A DNA stretch of 64,000 nt, from the NCBI RefSeq assembly GCF_963676685.1, contig NC_092346.1:53196001-53260000 (forward strand), given 5' to 3'. The notes beneath the pieces were generated by a model. That model ran no database searches. It saw only the letters and a program-made list of their open reading frames with translations, and was not told where the DNA came from. The translations under genes were made by a program, and so were the position numbers. This stretch comes from Mytilus edulis. Its lineage: Eukaryota. Positions 8,701 through 49,300 of this stretch are shown piece by piece. Each line of letters opens with the position of its first letter. Position 1 is the first letter of the stretch.

Positions 8701-11700
8701 TTGGTATTCGGTATTCGGTCGTTGACAACACTAATTAAATGCCAAAGGCAAAGGGCAGTTCAACATAATTCTTTTGCAACATTTATTTCTTATTTAATTG
8801 TATAAACTGGATATGAATATAATGGTTTACTTTTACAAATTGTGACTTTGACGGAAGGTTGTCACATTGGCACTACTAACACAACTTCTTACATCTATGA
8901 AAATGCCTTACTTCAAAGGAAAACCGGTAAATGGTTGATCTTTCAAATCTGAAGTCTGATAAAATCCAAACTCTGTACATGTCTGGTACATCCACTGACG
9001 TCCTGAAAAGAGGCAAAAGTGAGAATAAATAAATAAAATATTGTAGGACAGGCAGTAATGACATTCACAAATTTCCAATCCCCAACGTTAAACACAATTA
9101 GCACATATTGTCTTTGCAATATTAATTGCAGCCAAAATAAATGGAAGGCTATTTTATTTCATTTTCATACTCATTATACAACATGCCAAATATTTATTTT
9201 AAAACTAGTTTGAAGTCATTTGTTAAAGTAATTTCAAATACAAAAAATTTTAATATCTAAAAAAAAAATTGTAACTGTATATTTTCTCACCAGAATATAA
9301 ACAATATGCAATTTAAACACTTGTCCTCAACAGGAGCGTTTCAGGGGTTAATAAAGCATCAAATTGTATTCTAAAATTTTTGGATCAGAATTCTTTTTTC
9401 CCTCATATACCCCAAAATTCAATTGCCATACTGGTTGATAAAAGGATAATACATCAAATAGTCATTTCTTAAAGTAGGCCCTGTAAGTAAGTTAAAAGCA
9501 GGGCTTTCAGAGAACAAGAAGATGTGAATGAAAAAAAAACTTATGCCAAATATGGTGTGCCAAAGCTTATATGACCTTACTATTGGTAAATTAAAATGTA
9601 AAAGATGAGCAAAAAAATCAGTATAAAAAAATTTATAATTTTAAATAGAAAAAGTTATACACATATGTGTTTCTTACCGCCTTCCGCAGCACTGCTGTTC
9701 CAATCAGTTTTGGTTAGATCATCTATCATATTTTTGTAAGAAAAATCCATACATTTTTCTGAATATGTAGTCAACATCAAAGTGTTAACAGCTGCATATC
9801 TATTAATAGGATCACCACGGCCAACATCTTCCATTATGTTACACAATGTATCAACAGTTATATTGGTCCCAACTGCACCCTGTAAACATAGTAAAATCTT
9901 AATATTACAAAGAATATCTACTGTGTTTATTGCTTTTTCTACATACATGACATGTGGATAAAAAACTATGTCCTTATTAAAGCTGCACAGAACAATTTCA
10001 AGTTTGAAGAGAAAAAAAAAGTGGCGTTTGAGTGTTCTTTTTTGAATTTACAGTTACAATGGCCATATCAATTGATTAGTGAAAGCACCTATCAACTTGA
10101 AATTGATTAGGTTTGGAATTCTGTTTTTAGAAAGAAAAAAAAATCAAAATCTTTAAAAATGTTACCCGAAATGGAGGTTAATTTAACAAGCTATAATGTG
10201 CAAATCAATATATATGTAGGACTCAAATCTATGGCGGGTTCCAAATTTATGGCAGATTCCCAATCTATGGCAAATGTGACGTCATGCCATCCCCAATCTA
10301 TGGCAAATATGACGTCATGCCATCCCCAATCTATGGCAGATTTTTGTTTTCTCCAAATCCATGGCAGATCTTTAAATTGCGTCACAATGGAATAACGCAA
10401 AATTACATGGTCGCCGCCACAAACTATTGTGAAGCTCATAGATTTGAACACGATTCCAGATGAAGGTAATATCCTGGACAACAATTTGCAGATGGTTTAA
10501 AGGAAGATGTGACCTATTATTCGGAAGAGGGTCCAAATGTGCTGTACCAGCCAAAACCCGCGACGAACAAGCTAGGGCACCACTTTTTCAGTACTGGATT
10601 ATTAAAAAAGGAGTTATAGTAAATATTTTACTATCTTCAGTTGGAAAAGTTTATTAATTAAGTGATAGATAAAATTAACGGATATCTATTTGATTAAATT
10701 TTGTCAACAAATAAAAAAAATGTATTAACGATAAAATAATATTTTTGAAAATTCACAATTTTTTTTTGTTAAGGGACTTACTAGTTGGTCTAAGGAATGG
10801 GTTAATTAATTATAAGTACCATGATTACATATATTTTTTTAATTTTTACGGGGCACAACATTTCAAGCCTGAAGTCTGTATTGAGGAATTCCATCATTTA
10901 CAAAAAAAAATTGGTTAACATCACGATTTGGTTGACCATTATTTCACAAATGTTTATAGACATGTCGTACATTTCCACTGGTTTCACGGAAATCATTGAT
11001 CATATATGTACTGCATTGTTTTCCATTTGCTCAAAATTTGCCATAGATTTGGAAACAACAAAAATCCGTCATAGATAAGGAAACTGTAAAACTTGCCATA
11101 GATTAGGATTGTAAAAAATCTGCCATAGATTTGGGATGGCATGACGTCACATTTACCATAGATTAGAAATCTGCCATAGATTTGGAACCCACCATAGATT
11201 TGAGTCCTACATATATATATATATTCAGACAACAAACAGGTTGTTACATTTTGATATGAGTAAAAACTGGAAAGAGTAAATGTTTTTCACTAAACTGCCA
11301 CCAAATATTTATGGATTATATTTTTGAAAATGACAGAGTAAACACAAGATTAGGACAGTATCAAGATGCTTTAGAACAATGTTATCCCATATTGATATAT
11401 AATTTTTTTAATGTTGAGGGGTATATACACCCTTTTTTTAGATAAGAAAAAAAGCATCCTGTTTTGCATAAAATTATAAAAAAGATGCCTCACTAAAGTT
11501 ATTATTTTTTTGCTATTACCTCTATTTCCATAAACACTGCATGGTAATTAAAAGAAAAATATAATGGTAAATAAATTATTATTTTAATTTTTAGGAAGTG
11601 AAACAAACCTCAAAAGCCCTGTTATCTTTATTGTACTGTACAACACCTTCAAAGTTACCAGCCAAATTAGAGTAAAAGTTAGCTACATCCTTGGTGTTAG

Positions 11701-22000: not shown

Positions 22001-25000
22001 TCGACTGAGGGTCATGTTTCTATACTGTGATAGTCTTTCTGTCATAGTAGTGGTTAATTGATAAGTATGGTAACACATAGCAAAAAGTACACTCATATTA
22101 CAATGATAATTGAAAACATAATTTCTCTTATTTGGACAAGTGGCCATTGTTTTTGTTCAAACGGTATATTTTATCATTTACAAATTTGAATTACCATGTT
22201 GTTTTCTTTCCATTTTAGGTGTGGAAGTAGGAACAGTATGGGCCACAAGAATGGAATGCTGTCGTGATGGCATACACAGGTATTGGATGTTCTCATTAAT
22301 AATGCTAAAGCAAACAAGAGTGCACACACTGAAATGTCTGGCCTTCTTTACTAATCATTGATATTATGTTGATAGTCCTAAGTATAAAGCTTTATTACAA
22401 CTGTCACATAAACGTTACATTAACCAAGATAACTAAACAAAGACCAATGAACCATGAAAATGAGGTCAAGGTCAGATGAACCATGTCAGGCTGACATGAA
22501 CAGCTTACAATGCTTCCATAAAACAAATATAGTTGACCTAATACTTATAGTTTAAGAAAAATAGACCAAAACACAAAAACTTAAGACTGAGCAATGAACC
22601 GTGAAAATGAGGTCAAGGTCAAATAAAACCTGCGCGACTAATATATATATCATAAAATATTTCCATACACTAAATAAAGTTGACCTATGGCGTATAGTAT
22701 CAGATGAAAAGACCAAAACTCAAAAAACTTAACTTTGACCACTGAACCATGAAAATGAGGTCAAGGTCAGATGACATCTGTCCGCTAGACATGTTCACCT
22801 TACAATTATTCCATACAACAAATATAGTAGACCTATTGCATAAAGTATGAGAAAAATAGACCAAAACACAAAAACTTAACTATAACCACTGAACCATGAA
22901 AATGAGGTCAAGGTCAGATGACACCTGCCAGTTGGACATGTACACCTTACAGTCCTTCCATACACCGAATATACTAGCCCTATTGCTTATAGTATCTGTG
23001 ATATGGACTTGACCACCAAAACTTAACCTTGTTCACTGATCCATGAAATGAGGTCGAGGTCATGTGAAAACTGTCTGACGGGCATGAGGACCTTGCAAGG
23101 TACGCACATACCAAATATAGTTATCCTATTACTTATAATAAGAGAGAATTCAAAAAATCTGAACTTTTTTTTCAAGTGGTCACTGAACCATGAAAATGAG
23201 GTCAAGGACATTGGACATGTGACTGACGGAAACTTCGTAACATGAGGCTTTTACTGTAAAAGCACATATTTTCGTGGGGGATTTAATTTCGTTTATTTTG
23301 TGGATAAGAAGTATCCACGAAATTAAAACCCCAACGAAAATTTAACTGTAGATTTACATTATTTTATGATCTGACTAAATCTTATTGACATTATATAATT
23401 GATGAACATAAATGCAGACAATGAAATAAATAGGTTAATTGATTAGACATCGATATTCAAAGGTTTCCTTTAAGTCAGATGATAATCCTAATCCTTTGTT
23501 TGTACAGTAATTAATAATGATCAAGAACTGTCAATCAATGTCATTTAACAGTCTAATGTGTCTGTAATGCCCTCAAGTCGTAATACATTTATCACACAAT
23601 CATTGTCCTTGAATAAAACATCAAAGGTGTGTAACAGCCAATTAGCGTATGCAGGTTACAACACTTGATTAGTGCTCACTGTTACTATGAAATGCAATTA
23701 TTGATTTTTCCCAACGGCAAAAGTTCACATCAGTTTTATTGAGTATTGTCAATTATAAAGTGACATTTGTATAATTTTTTTCTAAACTTAAAAACCACGA
23801 AAATTAATCCCCACGAACTTACTTTTGGATACAAAACCACGAAATTTTAACCCCACGAAAATTAATGTTTATACAGTATATACAAAGTATGAAGCATCCA
23901 GGTCTTCCATCTTCTAAAATATAAAGCTTTAAAGAAGTGAGCTAACACCGCCGCCGCTGGATCACTATCCCTATGTCGAGCTTTCTGCATCAAAAGTTGC
24001 AGGCTCGACAAAAATCATTTGAAAATTTTATGTTTGTTTATTAGAATGTTAGAAGTAGAAATGTTGAAGTTTAGAGCTAAAGTGAAACTCCTTACAAAAT
24101 CCAATACAAGGACCACACTGAGATTTTGATGCTCAAATTATTGCTTGATTTTCAAACAAAATATGGTTCCTAGCTTAATATGTGTTTGGGTTACTTGTAT
24201 GATACCTCACCTGTATCACCATACTAACTTCCATCATTTATCATCCAGACAGTCAGAATATTATAGAAATCCTTTAAGAATGGTAAATTTATTTCCATTT
24301 GTTCCTATCACATTGAAATTAAGATTTGGGTGAATGGAGATTAAAGAAATTTCCAAATCATCTGAAATCAGGTCAGTCAGGCTATGGCAAGCAAACCTGT
24401 TTAATTTTGATTTTGGCTTAAATATTAATAAATCTTTGTGGAGTCCATCAACTCCCAATTTCAAAGAAAAGATTATGAAATAAAATAATTTGGTTATAAA
24501 TTATGAATTCAAATCTTGAATTATTATTAAAGGCAGAACATGTAAAGCACACAATGAAATCAGTATGTTTAATTTGTTATATAAAAATAAAAGGATGTGG
24601 TAGAGTCACCAATGAGACAACTCGACACAAGAGACGGGTCAACATTTTTAATTAATTCTCCATAGGCGACAATGGTAACGTTTTCCTCCATTGCTCAGTC
24701 CATATCGTTTACTTGAACATGTAGGATGGCTCATATCGAAGCTGATACATTTATACATGTTTGGTTAAATTTTCGGGGTGGCAAGTGAGATTACTTTTTT
24801 CGCAATTTGCTGGACCCCGGAAGATGGTGAAAAATGTCACTCTCCACATGAAATAATCCCAAAATTCTAATCATAAAACTCAATAAAAAAATTGTCCTTT
24901 CTAATAATTTATTTCAGGTCAAATCTACATATTTCTTTTCTCATCACATCAGCTCTATAAAACAGTTCTTATTGTTCATTTATGTCCATTTTTAAAATCA

Positions 25001-28000
25001 CAGCATCCACAATTGTATGGCGGACTTATATTGTTTTTTAATTACGTCATCTGAGTTCCTCATCTCAAGGTCTATTAGGGATCCTGACCCATATTAGATC
25101 AGCAAATGTCAGATTCCACTTGTATTGCAGTATGAATTCCATCGGTAGACCTTTTCGAACAATTCTGTGAAGTTTTTTTCCGCATCTGAAATAGAATAAG
25201 TTAATTTTTAGTATTTTTAAGTAAGCATGCTTATTACTGTTCCTTATATCTTTTAGTAGAAAAAAGCACAAAATCCATATGTTATCAATCCACAATTTAG
25301 ACATTAATTAAGACTTTTCATAGCTTAAAGTGCCATTCAACAAACCTTCATTACCTTACTGACTTTATTAAAATCATCATGTTTAGATGATAAAGCATGA
25401 AAATATTGTGTTTTTTACTGTAAATAAGGTAAATTTAAGGATTTTTTCACTCAGAAAATAATGTTTTTGATATTTGTTTCTTTCAAATAAGGAATAGAAC
25501 ATTTTTATTTTTTTATAACTGTTAAGATCATTCACAGACCATTCTAAAACAGGTTTTAGTTTTAAAATCCATCAAGCAATAACCATTTTAGAGTTCTTTT
25601 TGTGTGAGTGTTCAAATAGGGAAAAATGGTGCTTTTCTTTGGTAAAGATAACATTGTGACGTCATCGCTTTTGTGACGTCATGACTTTATGGTGTCATAA
25701 TTTAGAATTGTACAAACATAACAGAGTGTGTATTTATTCAATAATGAAAGGGAAAAGGAAAAGAAACCAATATAAGGTTGGTAACCAAGCCCATCTATTG
25801 CGTTTTGTATCCCTAACAACAGATCAAGATTGTGGTGTTAATAATAGTGTTGCTCCATCTACAGCTCCATCTACACCTCCATCTACACAGGTTTTAAAAA
25901 ATTTATCTATGCAAGTTTCACCTGCACCACCTAAATTTAAATTATCTAATTCCGCTACAGATTTGGCAACTAAAAACACCACAGAATCTGTCTGGTTACC
26001 CCGCCTTACAGAAAAGGAATTCAAGCTGTACTCAAAAGAGAGTTACGATAAAAAATCTTATGTAGCCCCCCAAACTGAAAAATGTGCGACTACAGTCAAA
26101 CTACTAAGACCGCATAAATTGTCAGATGATTATTTAGATGAATATTTAGAGGATAAAAGTACTGAAAATAGAACGGTAGATAGAGATCTTAATATTTTAA
26201 TGATCAATAGTCTTATAATATGTCATTTAAATAAAAGTCCAAAGTGTGTTGTTCCACATTTTGAACTGGTACAAGAGACTCAATGGGGTCTTGGTTGGAT
26301 TTGGAAAATGAAGTGTACCAATTGTAAATTTATTTCAGAAAAATATAAACTATTTAGAGAAATTGACACAGGACGTGCTGGTCGCAAGAGTGCTACAATT
26401 AACTATGGGTTTCAGACTGGCGTGATAAACTGTAATATTGGTAATGATAGCGCGCAACTACTTTTAACTAGTTCATGTATTCCTCCTATGTCGAAAGGAA
26501 CAATGCAGAGAATAACAAATACTGTTTGTGACAAGGTTGTTAAACTTGCGGAAAATGAAACCGAACAAGTGGTTGAGAGTTTCAGAAAGAGAAATGAAAC
26601 CTTAGGGTTAAATAAAAATAGTCCTATAAAATTGCAAATGGATGGTACCTATCAGAGTGTGCATATAAAAAGTAGGCATAAAATGGGACAAAATGCATCA
26701 CAAGTCATTGGTATTGCCTGTGAAAATGAAACTGACAATCATGATATCATTGGTTTTCACCTTGTAAACAAACTTTGCTGGGTTGGTGCATGGTTACGCG
26801 GTAAAGGTTATGACATTGAATGTCCTAATCACGAGTACTGCACATCAAATACAAATAGGCATGATCCTTTGAGTGAGAAGGATCTTGGGTATGAAATAGG
26901 TAAAAAAATTGCTAAACTTGATTTACTTGTGGACTATTGTACTACTGATGGGGATGCAAAAAGTGTACAAGGTTTACAAGAAGCCATGCAAGAAATATTT
27001 GACCCTTTATGGTCAGTAAATAGACTGGCAGATACTATACACCGGGGTCAAAGTCAGTTCCGTGAGGTATTGCGAGCAAAATTTAGTGTCGGTATGTTCC
27101 CTGGAGCTACAAAGGCTCAGAGGAATGATATTAAAATAGCTTTTGCCAATGATTTAAAATTACGTTCGCATGGTATAATGAAATGTTTATTTGCAAAATA
27201 TAATGGTGACCGACAACAAATTTCAAAATGTTTGCCACGCATTGTTAAGTCTGTAGTGAATTGTTATAGTGGTAATTGTAGCGATACGTGTAGATGGAGC
27301 ATAACACTATGTAATGGTGGTATAAAAACTAGTTGGTGGTACAAATCTATTAACCTTAGCAGTCATGGTTTACAAAATGGGTCTTTGAAACCAAATAAGA
27401 CTGACAAATTATTAATAGAATCATTGTTAGAAATGAAACTGTCTCAGACCGCATTAAATCAGATGCAATTTTTCAGCAATACAAATAAGTGTGAGTCCGT
27501 CAATAGGACAATTTCTACATACCTACCGAAGAATAAGAATTTTTCTCGCAATGCCTTAGGCCGTGCATCTGCAGCAGTCTTGAAAGTCAATAATAAACGG
27601 GATGTTGCATTGGCTAAGACCCTAAAAGCTGTAGGTTGTGGTCTGGGTAGAAAGTCTCGTGCTGTAGTGGCTCTGAAAAAAATACGTAAACGTGAAATAT
27701 ATGATTGTGCATATCAAAAAAGTTTACGTGTCAAATTAAACAGGTTAAAAGCTCGTAAAAAACAGGCTATCGATTTCTTGTTAAACAAGAGAGTGCGAAA
27801 CAGGTTGATTAGTGGATATAAAAAACATCAGTTAGAACCAAAGCTATGTCAGAATTCAAGTCCGAAAGAATTCGTTCCACAGCCAGGTTGTAGTTCATGG
27901 CCAGATTAACATTTATATTAAAAGGTTACACAATATGGTTTTCTTTCAGCCTTTCAGGAAGCATATGTAGTTATTTATTTATTTACAGAGAATACTAAAC

Positions 28001-31000
28001 ATCTTATATTATATTAAAACAAACACTTTTCAGGAATATATGAGCATGATATGAGTTAGTTGTGTTTTTTTTAAATTAAAAAGTTTGTTTATTTTAAGTT
28101 TGTTATGAAAATGGGATAATGGTCCAAGACACTGAAATAAACCTTGTATCAGACAAAAAGACCACTTCATATCTCCCAATGCAATGCATCCAGCCACAGT
28201 ACATGCATTTATTGGAAAACACATACCTTGAAACAAAATTATAAACAAAATAAAACCATGTAAAATGAATATTACAACATTAGGTCATTCACAGTTTGCC
28301 TTTGTAACTCGATGTCATATTTGGATTTTTTCCTTTCTGTTATTTTTTCTTTTGTTTTTTGTTAACTTATTTAATTAATGACTGTCATACTTTGTTCATT
28401 GATTTGTCTCTATGTTTCACTTTCATTTAGTTCTCTACCGCATGTTTACTTCCTGTGATCACCTGTTGATTGAATGACCCAGTTTTCTGACACAGTAATG
28501 AAACCATCAAGAGTTACTCCCCTTGCACTGTAAAAATTAGTAAACACTGGCGAAAAAAACCACATAAATGTTTGACTGAGCTTATAATCTTGCATAAACA
28601 TGTTTGCCATGTTTGTTTCAGTGTCTTGGGGGTATGAGGGTGGGCTTTTTTCCCATTTTCGTTTTTTACTTGTGTTAAAAACTTGTATTTTCAGAGATGA
28701 TTAATGTGGAGGTAAAATGTGCAAGGTGCATATGTTTACTACAAAATCATAACAAACCACAATTTCAGATTCAGCATGCAGTTAGTATAGTTTGTGCCAT
28801 GCACAATATGTGTGGTGCATTGGTGTGCAGCTACACATATTTTTCTTTGATTGTTAATCTCCCGAGGTTCTAAAACAATATGGTCTGTATTCACACACAA
28901 TGCATTATGACAAAGGTGTGAAGCATCTAAATTTTTGGCTAAATCAGTAGATTTCAATTGCAAAATTTTTGCTAAACGTGCAACATTCATTTTAGTACGT
29001 TTGGCATTTGGGTATGTGACATTGATCATCCCTAGAATATAATTATTTCTCCTCTGAGTGGCCCCAGTCCAAATAATGCATGCCCCATTTTTTGCCTCTT
29101 CACTGTTTATAAGTATAAAATTGGTATATTTTTGATAAAAATCTAAATTATTGGTAGCCATTTTGTATTCTTTTTAATCAAATAGCACTAAAAGAGTGTA
29201 ACTGACCTCGATTTCAGCAGCTGCCATCCGAAATTGTGATCATTGAACCATGAAACACTCCAACACCTTTGAAATAATAGTTCACAATTTGGGTCAACAT
29301 TTTTAATTAATTCTCCATAGGCGACAATGGTAACGTTTTCCTCCATTGCTCAGTCCATATCGTTTACTTGAACATGTAGGATGGCTCATATCGAAGCTGA
29401 TACATTTATACATGTTTGGTTAAATTTTCGGGGTGGCAAGTGAGATTACTTTTTTCGCAATTTGCTGGACCCCGGAAGATGGTGAAAAATGTCACTCTCC
29501 ACATGAAATAATCCCAAAATTCTAATCATAAAACTCAATAAAAAAATTGTCCTTTCTAATAATTTATTTCAGGTCAAATCTACATATTTCTTTTCTCATC
29601 ACATCAGCTCTATAAAACAGTTCTTATTGTTCATTTATGTCCATTTTTAAAATCACAGCATCCACAATTGTATGGCGGACTTATATTGTTTTTTAATTAC
29701 GTCATCTGAGTTCCTCATCTCAAGGTCTATTAGGGATCCTGACCCAGACCAAATGGCGTAGAAGTTTTGATAGCGCCATCCTTGTTATTTCCCCTGATTT
29801 TTATCATAGATAGATTTTTTTTGTGATTTGTAGGCCTACAGTAGCAGGAATCCATGCTGGACAAGATGGATCATTTTCTATTGCTCTCTCTGGTGGATAT
29901 GAAGACAATATTGACTTGGGAGATTGTTTTACTTACACAGGAGAAGGTTATTACATCTCTGTTGTTTCTGTCGTTACTATAAAAGTAAATTTCTTAAATG
30001 ATTTATGTAATTAAGGCCTAAGTATAAACTGCCTCTTATGGGCAGTTTATTTTTTGATAGACCATGTTTTAATGTGACAACTTTCGTAAGCAACATATAA
30101 ACAACATAGCAGCATCAAATTATGTCACACATACATGCATATACAAACCAGAAAAATTATTTACCATGTTTTACAGGTGGCTAATGTTGATAAACTAAAA
30201 TTAAAGGAATAATAAAGATTATTCACTTTTTCCCTTGTCAAATTTTAAATGGATTTACTTTGATGCCCTCAATTTGAACCCACTTACAAAAAAGGTTTGT
30301 AAGCTATTCTGACCAGAAGACACATTTTTTCGGATAAAATGGGAAAAATACGGTGTAATTGAAATAATGGACAATGACTGTTACTTCAGTGTCAAGGTAC
30401 AGACACCATGCAGAATGCTATAAACTAATTAGAAATCAGTAATTGATTAAATTCATATTGATAAAAGGTATAGGTCAGTTAGACAGCAACACAACAACAA
30501 CATAAAAACAGAGAAGACCTCTACAGGTCAACAATGCAATATTTGTAACATGCTTCTTGGAAGAAATTTTGGTAGTTATCTAGTAATATTGACCATAATG
30601 GCATTAAAAGAGTTATAATATTAGTAATTTTATTTTGCAGGAGGCAGAGATTTGAAAGGGACAGCTAACAAACATAAGGTAAAATATGGTCTTTAACTCT
30701 CCCTACTTAGAATACTGAGGTCTTTTGAAAGTCATACTCCTACTATTAAGTGTCGGGGTAGTGTGTGCTTGTTTGTTAGTCCATCATCCTGCACATTGTA
30801 AATTAAAACATCTAAAGCAGTTAGATAAAAGAAATTGACGAGTATTAATGGCCAGCCCAGCTCAACAAGTTCTATCTTTGAAGTCTTTTTTAATTTGAGA
30901 AAATTATGTCAACCTTTTTTTTTTAGCAACTACTCCTGAAAACTTAATTTATCATTTTTTGACATTGTTCCAATATCTTAAGGTTGAAAATGCAAAAATT

Positions 31001-43300: not shown

Positions 43301-46300
43301 AACAAATGTCCTATAAAATGCCTCTGAAAAATTATAAAATGTTTACACATAAAACATTTTGAAACTGTAGATTTTTATTTATTCAGAATCACAAAACTTA
43401 TTTTTTATACTTTAAAGAAAACAAATTAACAATATTTAAGTGGAAACTGTTCATCAAAAGCATTAATGACATGAGGAATATGTTGAAGGCTGTACTGACC
43501 TATAATAATAGTTTACTTTTTACCAATTGTGACTTCGAGGGAGAGTTGTCTCATTGGCACTCATACCAATGCCAATGTCAACAGTGTTAATTAAATTATA
43601 ATATATTGCTATTATTTTGTTGAGTGTATTTCCTGTAGTATATATTTTTTTTATTACACATGTTACATACTGTCTATGTACAAATTTATTGCATGTTATT
43701 ATTTATAATAATATTGTTTGTATGATTTATATGCCCTCCTGGGGCCCGTGAATATTCTATTCTATTCTATTCGTACCACATCTTATATCTATCTACATGC
43801 TCACATGTACATCTTATATCTATCTACATGCTCACATACATGTATGTGTCTATATAACAAATTTTGAGATAATCAAAATAGAGCATGTTAAAATTAAATT
43901 TACATTACAAGGTAACAGTACCTCTTTAGCTGCTGTAAATGCCACACCAGAAAAAGCATATCTGTCCACTATCAATGTAGTCCCGGCTTCTAACATGGAT
44001 TTCATTTTAGGCCTGAAATACAAGTGAACTAATAGATTCAACAAATTGTAGCTTTGACCTATATTCAAGGATGTTTAATAATATCTAACGTAGTAAGAGA
44101 TACAATGTTAATTTTCTCATGCAATTTCTGTTTGAAAATAAAACAAGGTTAAATTTTTTTTTTTAATTCAGACACAAAAGGTATCTAAACATCCACAAAA
44201 TATATGGTCTTAAAAGGGTTAAATGTAACAAGCTGATACATGTACATGTTGGCACTATAGTGTATGGCTAATCCTAAAATATTTCAAAGAACATGAACCT
44301 ATGGGTCTGACCACCTTAACTTTCCATGTGCTCAAATGGATGATTATATACCAACCTCATGAACTTGTTTACATTCACACATTATTTATCATAAAATGCT
44401 GTTGGTCAACAATGTACATGTATGTATGTACATTTGTACATGTTGGATGCTATGGAGCAGGACATGTATAATGCAACATTTGATGAACAGAAATATGCTG
44501 CCAGGAGCCAATAGTAATTGACCAAATAAAAATGCCATACAGCCTAGTGTTTGTAAAAATTATATATAAACAAACATATTTATAACATTTTATAACTAAA
44601 AAGAAATCCAAATGTATATATTTCATTTATTTCTAATAAGAAGCATACATTTTTTATTTTTACTTTACCAGCTGCTTCATATTGCTGGTCTTAATTGATT
44701 TTTTGGGTGGATTTACAAAAACAATGTATTTGTACTGTTTTCCTAATGGGTTTTTTCATCGGCATTTGTTTTAAAACAATCATTGTAATGTAATCATTGT
44801 AAATAAGTTTAATGTAATTATTCAGCTTAGCTTTGGGTGCTGTGATTAGCAATTAAACAATTTTCTATTCTATTCTGTACATGTATTATGTTTTTACTTA
44901 ACCTTTGTAATTAGCAAACCTATATTAAAATTGAAAAAAATGTAACATGCAAATGTCAAACTTACACCATTTCCCATCTGTTGGCTGAAAATAGAAGATG
45001 AACTGAATGGTCTTCTATTTCACATTTGTTACTAAGGTAACCATCAATCATTTTACCAATTGTTGTTGTTCTGTCTACAAAGAAAACAATTCAAACATTT
45101 CATCAAGCTGAAGTTTTATAGTTACAGTAGCCTGTTAGTAAGTAAAATAGTTTATTAAAGTGTCACATATTAAATATTTGTACATATAGATATACAATGT
45201 ATCTTCTCTTACCACCATGGAACCATCTTAGTGTTTCTATCACAATTTGTTACATATGAGATTTTCTATACTGCAGTAACATCTTGGATATCAATTATTT
45301 CGATTCTAATAGGACAAATACAGCAATTATTTTGGATGAAAGCACTCTAGGTGGAGGCAAATATTTGCCGTTACCATAAATAAATGCACTATCAAATAGG
45401 AGTAAAAGGATGGAGCAAACTGAATTAGTGACATGCTTAAACTACCGGTATTTACCATAACGTATTTAGATAGTTTTTGGAGGAAATTAAATGATAATTT
45501 ACTATTTGTCTTATATGTAAAAAAAAAAAAAAAAAGGCTTATTTGGGTATACATTTACAATTAATTCTCCATAGGCCGTAATGGTAACGTTTTCCTCCGT
45601 TGCTCAGTCCATATCGTTTACTTGAACATGTATGATGGCTCATATCGAAGCTGATACATTTATACATGTCTGGTTAAATTTTCGGGGTGGCAAGTGAGAT
45701 TACTTTTTTCGCAAATTGATGGACCCCGGAAGATGGTGAAAAATGTCAGTCTCCTCATGAAATAATCCCAAAATTCTGATCATAAAATTCAATGAAAAAA
45801 TTGTCCTTTCTAATAATTTATTTCAGGTCAAATCTACATCTTTCTTTTCTCATCACACCAGCTCTATAAAACAGTTCTTATTGTTCATTTATGTCCATTT
45901 TTAAAATCACAGCATCCACAATTGTATGGCGGACTAATATTTTTTTTAATTACGTCATCTGAGTTCCTCATCTCAAGGTCTATTAGGGATCCTGACCCAT
46001 ATTGAAATTCATACTTCTGATTTTTCCAAATATTTTTATGTGATCTTCATCGGTATAACATTCTGAATAAATCTGTGTATTTTTGTCCATTTCTGAAAAA
46101 AAATAAAGTTGTTTTAGCACTATAAGGCAATGCCACTTTCGTCGCTATATTCATTTATTTTGAATACAATGTGTTTGTATAATTAATTTCTTCCAGAATA
46201 CCTTCACTAGTCAAAACAAGGACAAAACTTCTGATTATAACCTTTAATTACAATACACAGACCCTGTTAAAGCATTCTATAAAATTTTCTTGTGCCTTAC

Positions 46301-49300
46301 AGTGCATTTTGACAGAGAAATTATGCAAAAATGAAGATTTTATAAAAAAACCAACACCAAAATAATTATTCTTACTAGTGGAAATCTGGTATTTAAAACT
46401 GTGGAAAGCACTCTTAACTACTTGGAAAGTCATCTTTATCATATAATTAGAGTGCAATATAGTGCAAATTTTCAAAACTTGTCCTTTCACATAATTCTAT
46501 TTGAGAAAAAATGTTTTTAACATGTATTTCAGTGAAAACCTTTTATTAGTGAGAAATCCACATGAGGTTTTAAAGGAAACATTGTGACATCACATGTATT
46601 ATGGCGTCATTAAATAACGACAGATCAAAATAGAGCTAAATATAGTTTGCAGTGTTACGTGAGAAACAGTTGCCGCAAGATTTAACTCGAAATATTGAGT
46701 CGAAACGATCTGTAACTAAGCCTTTTCATTTAATACCAAGACCATAGCAACAGTTTTCATATTTGCATATTTTTAACATACCGACTGTAATTTCAATTGC
46801 ATAAATACCATAAATAAACAATTTAGAGCTTGCCTAATAAAGCAAAATGCTTACCAGTTATTCAGGACTTTTTAAAACCTCTAGTTTGCCATCTCAGGCT
46901 AAAAAGTAATGATATGTCTGGAACTGAAATAAGACAAAAAAATTACTCAGGCTGTGTTATCATTTGATTTAAATACATAAGTACTATTGAGAGAGAAAAA
47001 TCTAATTCTTGGAAGTTTAATCACAAAGAAAGACAAATGCTTCTCCCTTGTGGCTTAGTCACCTTCATTTAAACCTTTTATTTTAGAAGCAATGGGTAGT
47101 AGCTAACTAGCTTAATAGTTGAATAGGTGCAGAAATATTGTTTTCAAAAAGGTTTGACCCTCCCCCTTTTTCACTGAGAAATGACAATATCTATTGTTTT
47201 GCTCAAGCGCATTAAAAATATTAGTTCATGATTTTCTTAAAACATGTACATGTTTTTTCTGTTTTTTTTGCATATGATATCTACTGACCAGGGGTCAAAT
47301 CATTGGATAAAAGCACATGCGATGATGTATCTCACTTTACTCGTATGAAGTGTGTTATCTCCCTTGATTATCAGGTATTCCTGTAGACCGAAGTGATAAT
47401 TACATAACAAAGACTATATTGTGTCATGTTTACTTACAATTTACTGTAATAATATTTAAAAGTTGTTTCTTGCCTTTTTCAATATAGTAAACAAATTCCT
47501 TTCGGATCTCTCGGAAGTAAACAAAGTGATGATTGTGCCTAAAAAAAGTGTTCAGCCCCGTGCCAGTAATGCATTTTAAAAGCAAAGTTTCATTGAGTTT
47601 TTGCTGATCTTTATCAATAATATTTATCTTAAACCATTTATAATAACTAGGTATAAATAAAAAACTACTAACCATCATTTTCGGTGGTGTACAAGGTGAA
47701 ATCATCCATAAATCAGCCTGAAAACTTCTGGAAGTAAGCTTCTAATTTGGGTATACATTTACAATTAATTCTCCATAGGCCGTAATGGTAACGTTTTCCT
47801 CCGTTGCTCAGTCCATATCGTTTACTTGAACATGTATGATGGCTCATATCGAAGCTGATACATTTATACATGTCTGGTTAAATTTTCGGGGTGGCAAGTG
47901 AGATTACTTTTTTCGCAAATTGATGGACCCCGGAAGATGGTGAAAAATGTCAGTCTCCTCATGAAATAATCCCAAAATTCTGATCATAAAATTCAATGAA
48001 AAAATTGTCCTTTCTAATAATTTATTTCAGGTCAAATCTACATCTTTCTTTTCTCATCACACCAGCTCTATAAAACAGTTCTTATTGTTCATTTATGTCC
48101 ATTTTTAAAATCACAGCATCCACAATTGTATGGCGGACTAATATTTTTTTTAATTACGTCATCTGAGTTCCTCATCTCAAGGTCTATTAGGGATCCTGAC
48201 CCATTTCACATTTATACCTCATTTTAGCAATCGTCTGTTTATGTTTCCTTGTTGTGATGATTTTCGCTCTCACAATCCTGTATTTGCCTGTAAAATGCTT
48301 ATATTCTTAGGTCATCGTTCTATGACATCTGGCACCTCATTCATGAAAAAGCATATGACGTGGGAGTACGATCAGAACAGCCCTGGCAATATATTCATAT
48401 TTTACCACGGGTGTGTACTCATAGTGTTTGAAGGACGTCATGTTAGAATCTATGTTGTACTAGAAAATTATGAAGTTAAGGACGTTTACACAAATAAATT
48501 ACTGTAAATTCAGAAATTATTGCATGTATTCATTATAGTGATTTTATCATTTTAGACTAAAATGTGGATCTAATTTTTTCTTTCGATATTCAGAAAAATC
48601 CTGTTTGATTCGAAATAATTCAAAACTGACTGATCTAAGGGGGGGGGGGGGGGGGCTCCAGTCATGCTTCAATGATTCCCTATATAATCAACCAAATTTT
48701 TCCCACAAAAGGGGGGGGACCGGAGCCCCCCCCCCCCCCCACTGGATCCCCCTATGATAGTTCAAGCGGGCAGATAATTCTCAGGTCAACTTGGACTGAT
48801 TTCCAAATAGTGATAAGGTGCATAGCTCACTGTGCAGTATTGGTTTTGCCCATTGTTGAAGGCCTATCAGAATACAGAATGACTAATTCAGTGTCAATTA
48901 ATGTAAGGAAAAAAATAGTTTTATATTGGTCAGGACATTAGGCAGAACTATGTAAGCAGTACAAGATCCCAAAGTTTATGTCAAATTTTGAGGACCCTCA
49001 TCAAAAATTTGCTCATAGAGGTGTGCAAGTAATCACATAATCAAAAATTTTAAAATAAAGCGGCAAACTGATGTTCGCCTCAAACTACCTGGAAAACGCA
49101 TAGCTTCCGTTTTAATTCCCTTTTCATTCAAAGCTGCAACAAGTTTTTTACATTGAGTTGTTTTGCCACTATGATCACATCCTTCAAATACAATAAGAGC
49201 TCCTCTAACTTCAGCTGTCGACGGCATCATCAATGTTCTTTTTAAATTTTGCGCCAAATTTATCGGAACACTTCTGACTTTTACCATAGACTGAACAAGC

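What the first reader, a model, noticed from the sequence alone, without database searches (positions are those of the whole stretch)
24632..29749. Intact, very young composite-like DNA transposon: direct-repeat ends, DDE transposase and homing-endonuclease-like gene
Seen in sequence: two identical 455-bp DIRECT repeats, each bounded by its own inverted ends (GGGTCAnnATnnnTAAT pattern at both ends), a clean 4-bp TSD (AGAC), and two unbroken convergent ORFs. It looks LTR-like but has no retroelement genes. It resembles a bacterial composite transposon, in which two mini-elements carry a central cargo. Established knowledge (my recollection): this is the architecture of KolobokP, a Kolobok lineage with ~450-660-bp long terminal direct repeats, a DDD/E transposase and a His-Me finger nuclease, reported mainly in molluscs and other invertebrates. 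Inference: identical repeats and intact ORFs make this a recent and possibly active copy, probably polymorphic. How the direct repeats are kept identical, and the transposition mechanism, remain open as far as I know.
Basis: partly seen in the sequence, partly recalled or inferred. Interest (0 to 1): 0.9.

Follow-up and report, generated by a model that had tools for sequence, protein, structure and literature searches.

The report
Known KolobokP transposon in a mussel
This is an intact, very young copy of KolobokP, a DNA transposon type with long direct-repeat ends that was described in 2022 in mussels of this same genus, so it is a clean example of a published element and not a new kind.

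Summary
Window 24636-29745 is a 5110-bp element with two identical 455-bp direct repeats (LTDRs). Each LTDR ends in GGGTCA...TGACCC, and the element is flanked by a 4-bp duplication, AGAC. It carries two unbroken convergent genes. The 742-aa protein has an RNase H-like DDE transposase fold with every Kolobok signature motif. The 140-aa protein is an I-PpoI-like His-Cys-box nuclease with all catalytic and zinc residues.

This is KolobokP (Kojima and Bao 2022, PMC9587614), in the family group KolobokP-1/2_MyGa described from Mytilus. The host is a Mytilus mussel.

In this genome the LTDR end occurs about 300 times. I found at least 30 insertions with matching 4-bp duplications, plus solo LTDRs, non-autonomous partners and large multimers, all as published.

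Small additions:
- The target site is Y|ANNT|R; this copy sits in an off-consensus site.
- Only 10 of about 60 scored transposase copies are uninterrupted.
- Stop-bearing copies were amplified in tandem arrays.
- Lineage-specific LTDR substitutions sit in both repeats, which implies left/right homogenisation.

Read-level tests could not be run. The scan's other notes here (s1-832383, s1-832400) lie on this same window.

The parts
24632..24635 (.). Left copy of the 4-bp target-site duplication, AGAC
   Evidence: Sequence read directly. The paralogous empty site has a single 4-mer here.
24636..25090 (+). Left long terminal direct repeat (LTDR), 455 bp. It starts GGGTCA and ends TGACCC (6-bp TIR, 5'-GG...CC-3').
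   Evidence: 100% identical to 29291-29745. All 40 scored genomic matches are 99-100% identical, out of 1372 candidates.
25091..29290 (+). Internal region (INT), 4200 bp. It starts ATAT and ends ATTT, and both 4-mers fit the family's ANNT target.
   Evidence: The first ~280 bp match the start of KolobokP-1_MyGa-I printed in the paper's Data S1.
25654..25687 (+). Two tandem 17-bp units, each holding the palindrome TGACGTCA (CRE/ATF-type site). They lie just upstream of the likely true start codon, so this is a candidate transposase promoter element (inference).
   Evidence: Direct repeat D19. Motif count in the window is 7 against 0.4 expected.
25681..27909 (+). Kolobok-type DDE transposase ORF, 742 aa from the first ATG. 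The likely real start is M22 at 25744, giving 721 aa like homologue P0001. Catalytic and signature residues: D321, D423, E605; CCHC finger C366/C381/H384/C387; DxxH D451-H454; Cys4 finger C528/C533/C537/C544.
   Evidence: Pfam PF20700, E 1.2e-58. Residues invariant across 30 homologues down to 25% identity. AF2 model pLDDT 76.5 with an RNase H-like core. Fold matches to P element, ISCth4 and Hermes transposases.
28739..29161 (-). His-Cys-box His-Me finger nuclease ORF, 140 aa, I-PpoI-like. S81-H82, C84, C89, H94, E98 and N103 correspond to I-PpoI S97-H98, C100, C105, H110, E114 and N119. The inferred second zinc site is C109/C115/H118/C128.
   Evidence: Pfam PF05551, E 3.5e-13. phmmer against PDB finds I-PpoI, E 0.015. 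Conserved columns in 50 homologues. AF2 pLDDT 93.7. Best Foldseek match is I-PpoI 1a74, probability 0.97.
29291..29745 (+). Right LTDR, 455 bp, identical to the left one
29746..29749 (.). Right copy of the target-site duplication, AGAC
45545..48202 (+). Non-autonomous partner element, 2658 bp. Its 454-bp LTDRs are 95% identical to those of the autonomous copy. Its INT is unrelated and has no notable ORFs. TSD is ATTT (45541-45544 and 48203-48206). Its size and LTDR length match the published KolobokP-H1_MyEd (2664 bp, LTDR 455).
   Evidence: Table S1 of PMC9587614

Best explanation
Window 24636-29745 is a full-length autonomous KolobokP element, a lineage of the Kolobok superfamily of DDE DNA transposons. 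It sits in the genome of a Mytilus mussel.

How it most likely works:
- The transposase binds the short inverted ends that bound every LTDR. It cuts at the outer end of the left LTDR and the outer end of the right LTDR, and it moves LTDR-INT-LTDR as one unit into a 4-bp target. (The termini and TSDs are shown; the chemistry is inferred from the fold.)
- Each LTDR carries both ends, so it is itself a minimal non-autonomous transposon. That explains the solo LTDRs with their own TSDs, the non-autonomous partners that share the LTDR, and the INT-INT junctions where an LTDR is missing.
- The I-PpoI-like nuclease is catalytically intact. The published model, which I adopt as the most likely, is that it does not choose insertion sites. 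Instead it breaks DNA within or at the ends of LTDRs and so provokes unequal sister or allelic recombination between LTDRs. That would produce multimers and solo LTDRs and keep the two repeats alike. This step is inferred, not shown.

This copy belongs to a small sub-lineage (five loci) whose repeats and genes are 99-100% identical and uninterrupted, so it inserted very recently.
For: Architecture and TSD.

Transposase:
- Pfam PF20700, E 1.2e-58.
- Invariant D321, D423/D425, E605, the CCHC finger, DxxH and a Cys4 finger in 30 homologues.
- The AF2 model places D321 on strand 1, D423 after strand 4 and E605 on a helix following an all-alpha insertion.
- Best structural neighbours are P element transposase (Foldseek E 6e-4), ISCth4 (Z 10.3) and Hermes (Z 9.8).

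Nuclease: Pfam PF05551; I-PpoI is the best sequence match and the best fold match, and all catalytic and zinc residues are kept.

Family identity:
- The definition and Table S1 come from PMC9587614.
- The start of the LTDR resembles the KolobokP-1_MyGa LTDR.
- The INT start matches KolobokP-1_MyGa-I.
- The transposase is about 88% identical, counted by eye, to the KolobokP-2_MyGa_1p stretch printed.
- The closest database proteins are Mytilus edulis, 97-100% identical.

Mobility as a unit:
- The LTDR 3' end has 298 exact copies against 0 for the control.
- At least 30 insertions have matched 4-bp TSDs; they include full elements, non-autonomous elements, multimers and solo LTDRs.
- A paralogous empty site exists.

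Multimers and INT-INT junctions.

Recent origin: 10 uninterrupted transposase ORFs at 99-100% identity across five loci, with LTDRs differing at 0-1 positions.
Against: - No direct evidence of current activity, expression or polymorphism.
- Pfam labels the transposase 'Mutator-like', not Kolobok. I could not run Repbase or a Kolobok-wide phylogeny, so superfamily placement rests on the signature motifs and on close identity to sequences the family's authors placed in Kolobok.
- The nuclease's substrate is unknown. No abutted LTDR-LTDR (circle-junction-like) sequence exists in the assembly, and the homodimer prediction gave no verdict.
- This copy's target (G|AGAC|C) departs from the family consensus Y|ANNT|R.
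Confidence: 0.93

Rival explanations
1. A Mutator-like element (MULE), as the Pfam family name 'Mutator-like transposase' would suggest.
For: PF20700 'Mutator' is the only Pfam hit, E 1.2e-58. UniRef names the Mytilus homologues 'Mutator-like transposase domain-containing protein'. ISCth4, an IS256-family enzyme that is bacterial kin of Mutator, is the top VIA match at Z 10.3.
Against: - The TSD is 4 bp at 30 or more insertions, not the 8-11 bp of MULEs (the MULE figure is established knowledge).
- The TIRs are 6 bp with 5'-GG...CC-3', not long MULE TIRs.
- No hit to the MULE or SWIM Pfam families at E up to 1.
- The CCHC finger after D1 and the Cys4 finger between DxxH and E are the Kolobok signatures described in PMC9587614.
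- P element and Hermes match about as well as ISCth4, as expected for the P/hAT/MuDR/Kolobok supergroup.
- The family's authors placed near-identical Mytilus sequences in Kolobok by phylogeny.
Confidence: 0.03
2. A chance local composite: a Kolobok gene pair that happens to be bracketed at this locus by two independent insertions of a 455-bp MITE-like element. It would not be a unit that transposes as a whole.
For: Each LTDR has its own inverted ends. The INT begins ATAT and ends ATTT, and both fit the ANNT target of solo LTDR insertions. Solo LTDRs with their own TSDs are common. This may well be how the lineage first arose.
Against: The same LTDR-INT and INT-LTDR junction sequences recur at a dozen or more loci, each bracketed by a different outer 4-bp TSD: AGAC, ACAT, AATT, AGTT, ATTT, AACT. 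The 4-mers at the inner borders (ATAT, ATTT) do not match the outer TSD. So the whole unit moved.
Confidence: 0.02
3. An LTR retrotransposon or DIRS-like element, or an assembly artefact that duplicated one repeat.
For: Long identical direct repeats and a 4-bp TSD look superficially LTR-like. Identical repeats are where assemblers make errors. The C2 multimer contains a 100-N gap.
Against: - No reverse transcriptase, integrase, protease or tyrosine recombinase. The only ORFs of 80 aa or more are a DDE transposase and a His-Me nuclease.
- The repeats end in GG...CC with inverted ends, not TG...CA.
- The two-repeat structure recurs at independent loci with matched TSDs.
- The window itself contains no N.
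Confidence: 0.02

Closest known systems
KolobokP-1_MyGa / KolobokP-2_MyGa (Mytilus galloprovincialis), Kojima and Bao 2022, Mob DNA 13:24 (PMC9587614)
   Same: - Total length: 5110 bp here against 5127 and 5108 bp.
- LTDR of 455 bp, 4-bp TSD, TIR of 6-7 bp.
- Transposase on the direct strand and His-Me nuclease on the complementary strand.
- The INT starts with the same sequence as KolobokP-1_MyGa-I.
- A KolobokP-2_MyGa copy listed in Data S2 has LTDR 455 + INT 4201 + LTDR 455.
- Multimers, solo LTDRs and INT-INT junctions with a 3-bp loss, as published.
   Different: - The transposase is only about 88% identical, counted by eye, to the KolobokP-2_MyGa_1p stretch printed.
- The LTDR differs by several percent from the KolobokP-1_MyGa LTDR.
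- So this is a sister subfamily or a species variant. An exact comparison was not possible because the consensus sequences are held only as machine-read PDF text.
KolobokP-H1_MyEd (Mytilus edulis non-autonomous family, 2664 bp, LTDR 455 bp, TSD 4, TIR 7)
   Same: The second element in the window (45545-48202, 2658 bp, LTDR 454 bp, TSD ATTT) fits these dimensions. Its LTDRs are 95% identical to those of the autonomous copy. The autonomous copy is therefore the likely transposase source for that family.
   Different: The match rests on dimensions only; its sequence was not compared with the published consensus. Table S1 lists no autonomous 5.1-kb, 455-bp-LTDR family for M. edulis.
I-PpoI (His-Cys box homing endonuclease of a Physarum group I intron; PDB 1A73/1A74)
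   Same: It is the best sequence hit and the best fold hit for the 140-aa protein. S97-H98, C100, C105, H110, E114, N119 and the second zinc site are all conserved.
   Different: - The nuclease here is encoded by a transposon, not an intron.
- It is 140 aa against 163 aa, with about 20% identity.
- There is no known homing site. The element's insertion sites are diverse, so the nuclease does not set the target.
Bacterial composite transposons and IS26-type pseudo-compound transposons
   Same: Two copies of a self-sufficient end-bearing module bracket a central segment. The module can move alone, and arrays can grow by recombination between modules.
   Different: Here the modules carry no gene and the transposase lies in the central segment. 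The host is an animal, and the modules are always in direct orientation.

Membership tests
KolobokP (Kojima and Bao 2022) | LTDR-INT-LTDR architecture with LTDRs of about 450 bp or about 660 bp | tested here: met
   Two identical 455-bp direct repeats flank a 4200-bp INT.
KolobokP (Kojima and Bao 2022) | Each LTDR has its own short terminal inverted repeats; termini are 5'-RR...YY-3' | tested here: met
   GGGTCA...TGACCC, a 6-bp perfect TIR, with GG...CC termini. The published Mytilus families have TIRs of 6-7 bp.
KolobokP (Kojima and Bao 2022) | TSD of 3-5 bp, 4 bp for most 450-bp-LTDR families | tested here: met
   AGAC here. At least 30 other insertions in the genome have matched 4-bp TSDs.
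KolobokP (Kojima and Bao 2022) | DDD/E transposase on the direct strand with a CCHC finger after the first D, a C/DxxH motif, and a zinc finger between that motif and the last E | tested here: met
   D321; C366/C381/H384/C387; D423; D451xxH454; C528/C533/C537/C544; E605. All are invariant or nearly so in 30 homologues. The model has an RNase H-like fold.
KolobokP (Kojima and Bao 2022) | Small His-Me finger (His-Cys box) nuclease downstream on the complementary strand | tested here: met
   140-aa ORF at 28739-29161 on the minus strand. PF05551 hit, I-PpoI-like, all key residues present.
KolobokP (Kojima and Bao 2022) | Solo LTDRs and multimers of the forms (LTDR-INT)n-LTDR and LTDR-(INT)n-LTDR occur in the same genome | tested here: met
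   At least 10 solo LTDRs with TSDs. A C2 multimer with at least 7 INTs and one INT-INT junction lacking 3 bp. Arrays on C10 and C1975 with 4195-4199-bp spacing.
KolobokP (Kojima and Bao 2022) | The transposase falls inside the KolobokP clade in a Kolobok-wide phylogeny | not tested
   No Repbase or Kolobok reference set is available as usable sequence. Indirect support: about 88% identity, by eye, to the printed KolobokP-2_MyGa_1p stretch, and the INT start matches KolobokP-1_MyGa-I.
Mutator-like elements (MULE/MuDR) | TSD of 8-11 bp, long TIRs, MULE (PF10551) transposase domain | tested here: not met
   TSD of 4 bp, TIR of 6 bp, and only PF20700 hit at E up to 1. The MULE criteria come from established knowledge.
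LTR retrotransposons | Reverse transcriptase and integrase genes; LTRs ending TG...CA | tested here: not met
   No such ORFs or domains. The repeats end GG...CC.
His-Cys box homing endonucleases (I-PpoI group) | Catalytic His and Asn of the beta-beta-alpha-metal motif, plus eight Cys/His that form two zinc sites | tested here: met
   H82 and N103; C28/C84/C89/H94 and C109/C115/H118/C128, all conserved in 50 homologues. Assignment of residues to the two zinc sites is by alignment with I-PpoI and is partly inferred.
His-Cys box homing endonucleases (I-PpoI group) | Sits in a group I intron and cleaves the intron-less allele (homing) | tested here: not met
   It is encoded in a transposon. No Rfam family, group I introns included, was found in 24000-30500. 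Insertion sites are diverse. Cleavage activity cannot be tested with these tools.

The most novel reading that the evidence does not exclude
The sub-lineage to which this copy belongs may be transposing now, and this genome may record the KolobokP life cycle in a form that can be tested. Three observations support that reading.

1. Substitutions that mark LTDR sub-lineages always sit in both repeats of an element. The rare variant 346T>A is in both LTDRs of two separate elements. A cut-and-paste element can only achieve this by left/right homogenisation, for example by passing through multimers.
2. Copies with a premature stop in the transposase were amplified to dozens of units inside two arrays. 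This is growth by recombination, not transposition, and it is the role proposed for the nuclease.
3. Integration has a palindromic Y|ANNT|R preference, whereas the published account reports no strong preference.
Probability: 0.3. Interest if true: 0.45.

Novelty: already known. Interest (0 to 1): 0.25.

Why it matters
As a discovery it matters little. The element type, its two genes, its repeats, its multimers and its presence in Mytilus were all published in 2022.

Its value is as material. KolobokP's mechanism is unsolved: how the whole unit is preferred over a single LTDR, what the homing-endonuclease-like protein cuts, and how the two repeats stay alike. This genome offers intact, essentially identical autonomous copies at five loci, together with their non-autonomous partners, solo repeats and arrays. 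An intact natural copy like this one is what one would clone to test excision, integration-site choice (Y|ANNT|R) and nuclease specificity.

For annotation, the Mytilus proteins named 'Mutator-like transposase' in public databases are Kolobok transposases.

Tried and rejected
Polymorphism, assembly support from reads and expression all remain untested.
The C10 array, the C4, C8 and C9 copies and the more divergent subfamilies could not be read base by base.
- Nuclease homodimer prediction: no verdict. It is not evidence either way.
- Search for head-to-tail abutted LTDR ends with a 0-12 bp spacer, a possible relic of a circular intermediate or a palindromic nuclease site: none in the assembly.
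- Rfam scan of the element: nothing at E up to 0.1.
- phmmer of the transposase against PDB sequences: nothing meaningful. Only the fold comparison was informative.
- Homing into the 60-bp satellite on C11: three full copies and one solo LTDR sit at the same position of the satellite unit with TSD AACT. All three full copies share the same left/right LTDR difference, 344T>G in the right repeat only. Ordinary unequal crossover within the satellite explains this as well as nuclease-driven homing does, so no claim is made.
- P0071, which looked like a natural transposase-nuclease fusion, is a nuclease N-terminus joined to the second half of a transposase. It is most likely a rearranged copy.
- One pattern call failed on a length rule and was resent in shorter form.

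Full report
**Observation.** Window 24636-25090 and 29291-29745 are two 455-bp direct repeats that are identical at every base. Each begins GGGTCAACATTTTTAAT, and the reverse complement of its end reads GGGTCAGGATCCCTAAT. The 5110-bp unit is flanked by AGAC on both sides, at 24632-24635 and 29746-29749. Only two ORFs of 80 aa or more lie in the region, and they converge: 25681-27909 (+, 742 aa) and 28739-29161 (-, 140 aa).

**The two proteins.**

The 742-aa protein matches Pfam PF20700 ('Mutator-like transposase', E 1.2e-58) and no other family.
- An alignment with 29 homologues, down to 25% identity, shows these residues invariant or nearly invariant: D321, D423 and D425, E605, C366/C381/C387 (with H384 these form a CCHC finger after the first D), D451xxH454, and C528/C533/C537/C544.
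- This is the order of motifs that Kojima and Bao give for Kolobok, and specifically for the late Kolobok lineages that include KolobokP.
- An AlphaFold2 model (pLDDT 76.5, pTM 0.71) has an RNase H-like core. D321 lies on the first strand, D423 directly after the fourth strand, and E605 on a helix that follows an all-alpha insertion domain.
- Its best structural neighbours are the Drosophila P element transposase (Foldseek E 6e-4, probability 1.00), ISCth4 (Z 10.3), Hermes (Z 9.8) and Tn5 (Z 8.9).
- Residues 1-100 are predicted to be disordered. The closest homologue is 721 aa long, so the real start is probably M22 at 25744.

The 140-aa protein matches PF05551, the zinc-binding loop region of homing endonucleases (E 3.5e-13).
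- Against PDB sequences the only family it finds is I-PpoI (E 0.015). S81-H82, C84, C89, H94, E98, N103 and C109 align to I-PpoI S97-H98, C100, C105, H110, E114, N119 and C125.
- These residues, and the remaining zinc ligands, are conserved in 50 homologues.
- The model is confident (pLDDT 93.7), and its best fold match is I-PpoI (1a74, probability 0.97). NFI and SMAD MH1 DNA-binding domains follow at lower probability (0.5 or less).

**What it is.** PMC9587614 (Kojima and Bao, Mob DNA 2022) defines KolobokP by the following features:
- LTDRs of about 450 or 660 bp, each with its own short TIRs and RR...YY termini;
- a TSD of 3-5 bp;
- a DDD/E transposase on the direct strand;
- a His-Me finger nuclease on the complementary strand;
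- abundant solo LTDRs and multimers.

Table S1 lists KolobokP-1_MyGa (5127 bp, LTDR 456/455, TSD 4, TIR 6) and KolobokP-2_MyGa (5108 bp, LTDR 455, TIR 7) from Mytilus galloprovincialis. It also lists a 2664-bp non-autonomous KolobokP-H1_MyEd with 455-bp LTDRs from M. edulis.

The sequence comparisons point the same way.
- The paper's Data S1 text for KolobokP-1_MyGa-I begins with the same sequence as this INT.
- The KolobokP-1_MyGa LTDR begins like this LTDR, with several percent difference.
- The printed KolobokP-2_MyGa_1p alignment row is about 88% identical, by eye, to this transposase.
- The nearest database proteins are M. edulis entries at 97-100% identity.

The genome is 1.37 Gb, and the large contigs hit by these searches are numbered C1 to C14. 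That fits a Mytilus mussel; the karyotype argument comes from my own knowledge. The element is therefore a member of an already described family group, in the genus where it was described.

**Behaviour in this genome.**

*Copy number.* The 22-nt 3' end of the LTDR occurs 298 times exactly, against 0 for the reversed control. A blast of the LTDR gave 1372 candidates, and all 40 that were scored are 99-100% identical.

*TSDs and target site.* By printing flanks with pattern searches and reading 30 fetched loci, I paired left and right ends at 30 or more insertions. Every pair has a matching 4-bp TSD. The insertions include full autonomous copies (for example C2:10591530-10596641, TSD ACAT), non-autonomous monomers and multimers, and at least 10 solo LTDRs.
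- The TSD is A-N-N-T in 39 of 40 left flanks and 40 of 41 right flanks.
- The base before it is C or T in 37 of 40 cases, and the base after it is A or G in 35 of 40.
- The target is therefore the palindrome Y|ANNT|R.
- The window copy (G|AGAC|C) is one of the rare exceptions.
- The INT itself begins ATAT and ends ATTT, so the inner borders of both LTDRs also look like target sites. That is consistent with a composite origin.

*Empty site.* A 77%-identical paralogue on C4 runs without a gap across the insertion point. It carries one AAAC where this locus has two AGAC.

*Multimers.* They are as published.
- C2:32937634-32968431 is one insertion (TSD ATTT) with at least seven INTs. One INT-INT junction has lost 3 bp, and the array contains a 100-N assembly gap, which I left untouched.
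- Of about 60 scored transposase copies, 10 are uninterrupted (99-100% identity) and lie at five loci: this one, the C2 multimer, and single copies on C8, C9 and C4.
- At least 35 copies carry the same single TGA. Most of these lie in two arrays, on C10 at 1.70-1.78 Mb and on contig C1975. Their spacings of 4195-4199 bp show INT-INT units without LTDRs.
- Defective copies were therefore multiplied in place, not by transposition.

*How the repeats stay alike.* In a cut-and-paste element no step regenerates both repeats from a single template. Yet every substitution that marks an LTDR sub-lineage (234A>G, 384G>C, 392T>A, 447T>C) is present in both repeats of each element. The rare 346T>A occurs in five LTDRs genome-wide, and four of them are the left and right repeats of two separate elements. 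Single-repeat differences also exist: 82A>G, 389A>T and 344T>G. So mutations arise in one repeat and are sometimes copied to the other. Unequal crossover into multimers, followed by mobilisation of an internal monomer, would do this, and so would gene conversion. Which process acts is inference.

**Mechanism.**
- Shown: the termini, the TSDs, the intact catalytic residues, the recurrence of the whole unit at many loci, the separate existence of solo LTDRs, and the multimers.
- Inferred from the fold and the family: DDE cut-and-paste at the outer ends.
- Inferred from the published model: the nuclease cleaves in or at LTDRs and stimulates recombination.

Nothing here identifies the nuclease's site. 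No abutted LTDR ends exist in the assembly, and the dimer prediction gave no verdict.

**Limits.** Expression, polymorphism, read support and base-level study of the arrays are therefore missing. Superfamily placement was not tested by phylogeny.

**Verdict.** Novelty is 'already known'. The element is a clean, very young example of KolobokP.

Noticed in passing
window 45545-48202: A second KolobokP element, non-autonomous, 2658 bp, 16 kb downstream. Its 454-bp LTDRs are 95% identical to those of the autonomous copy, its INT is unrelated and non-coding, and its TSD is ATTT. Its dimensions match the published KolobokP-H1_MyEd. Genome-wide this INT type is commoner than the autonomous one: 46 against 12 of the 100 LTDR ends listed.
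   Followed up: partly
window 29823-29960 (+): A SAD/SRA (YDG) domain exon (PF02182, E 1.6e-8) starts about 75 bp after the element's right end, behind a polypyrimidine tract and an AG. The element therefore lies in an intron of an SRA-domain gene. A paralogue on C4 (L039) keeps this exon at about 97% identity.
   Followed up: partly
window 25654-25687; also 10277, 10310, 11142, 17846, 63845: The palindrome TGACGTCA (CRE/ATF site) occurs 7 times in the window against 0.4 expected. Two copies in tandem 17-bp units lie just upstream of the transposase's likely start codon, and another close pair is at 10277/10310. They may be promoters of transposable elements.
   Followed up: no
G000:C11:1096117-1113172 (L031-L033): Three full copies and one solo LTDR are inserted at the same position of a 60-bp satellite unit, all with TSD AACT and separated by 5-7 satellite units. 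All three full copies share the same left/right LTDR difference. Satellite unequal crossover or homing-like copying could each explain this.
   Followed up: partly
G000:C10:1700931-1785729 and contig C1975: Arrays of at least 17 and at least 11 copies in both orientations, all carrying the same premature TGA in the transposase. Many are spaced 4195-4199 bp, that is INT-INT without an LTDR. C1975 may be an unplaced copy or the other haplotype of the C10 region.
   Followed up: no
G000:C9:5326948-5332062 (L001, L012): This copy has four extra bases, AATT, between the INT end and the right LTDR. They are identical to its TSD AATT, so the 4-mer appears three times. It may be a footprint of LTDR excision and reinsertion, or a micro-duplication.
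   Followed up: no
G000:C2:19144888-19144937: Two LTDRs lie tail to tail in inverted orientation, separated by only 10 bp (TGACCC AATATAATAT GGGTCA).
   Followed up: no
window 24553-24635: The last 60-80 bp before the insertion site belong to a dispersed repeat with dozens of copies at 79-88% identity across the genome. The element therefore landed at the edge of another repeat.
   Followed up: no
proteins P0161 and P0071: P0161 (498 aa) carries three tandem His-Me (PF05551) domains. P0071 (538 aa) joins a His-Me domain to the second half of a Kolobok transposase and is probably a rearranged element.
   Followed up: partly
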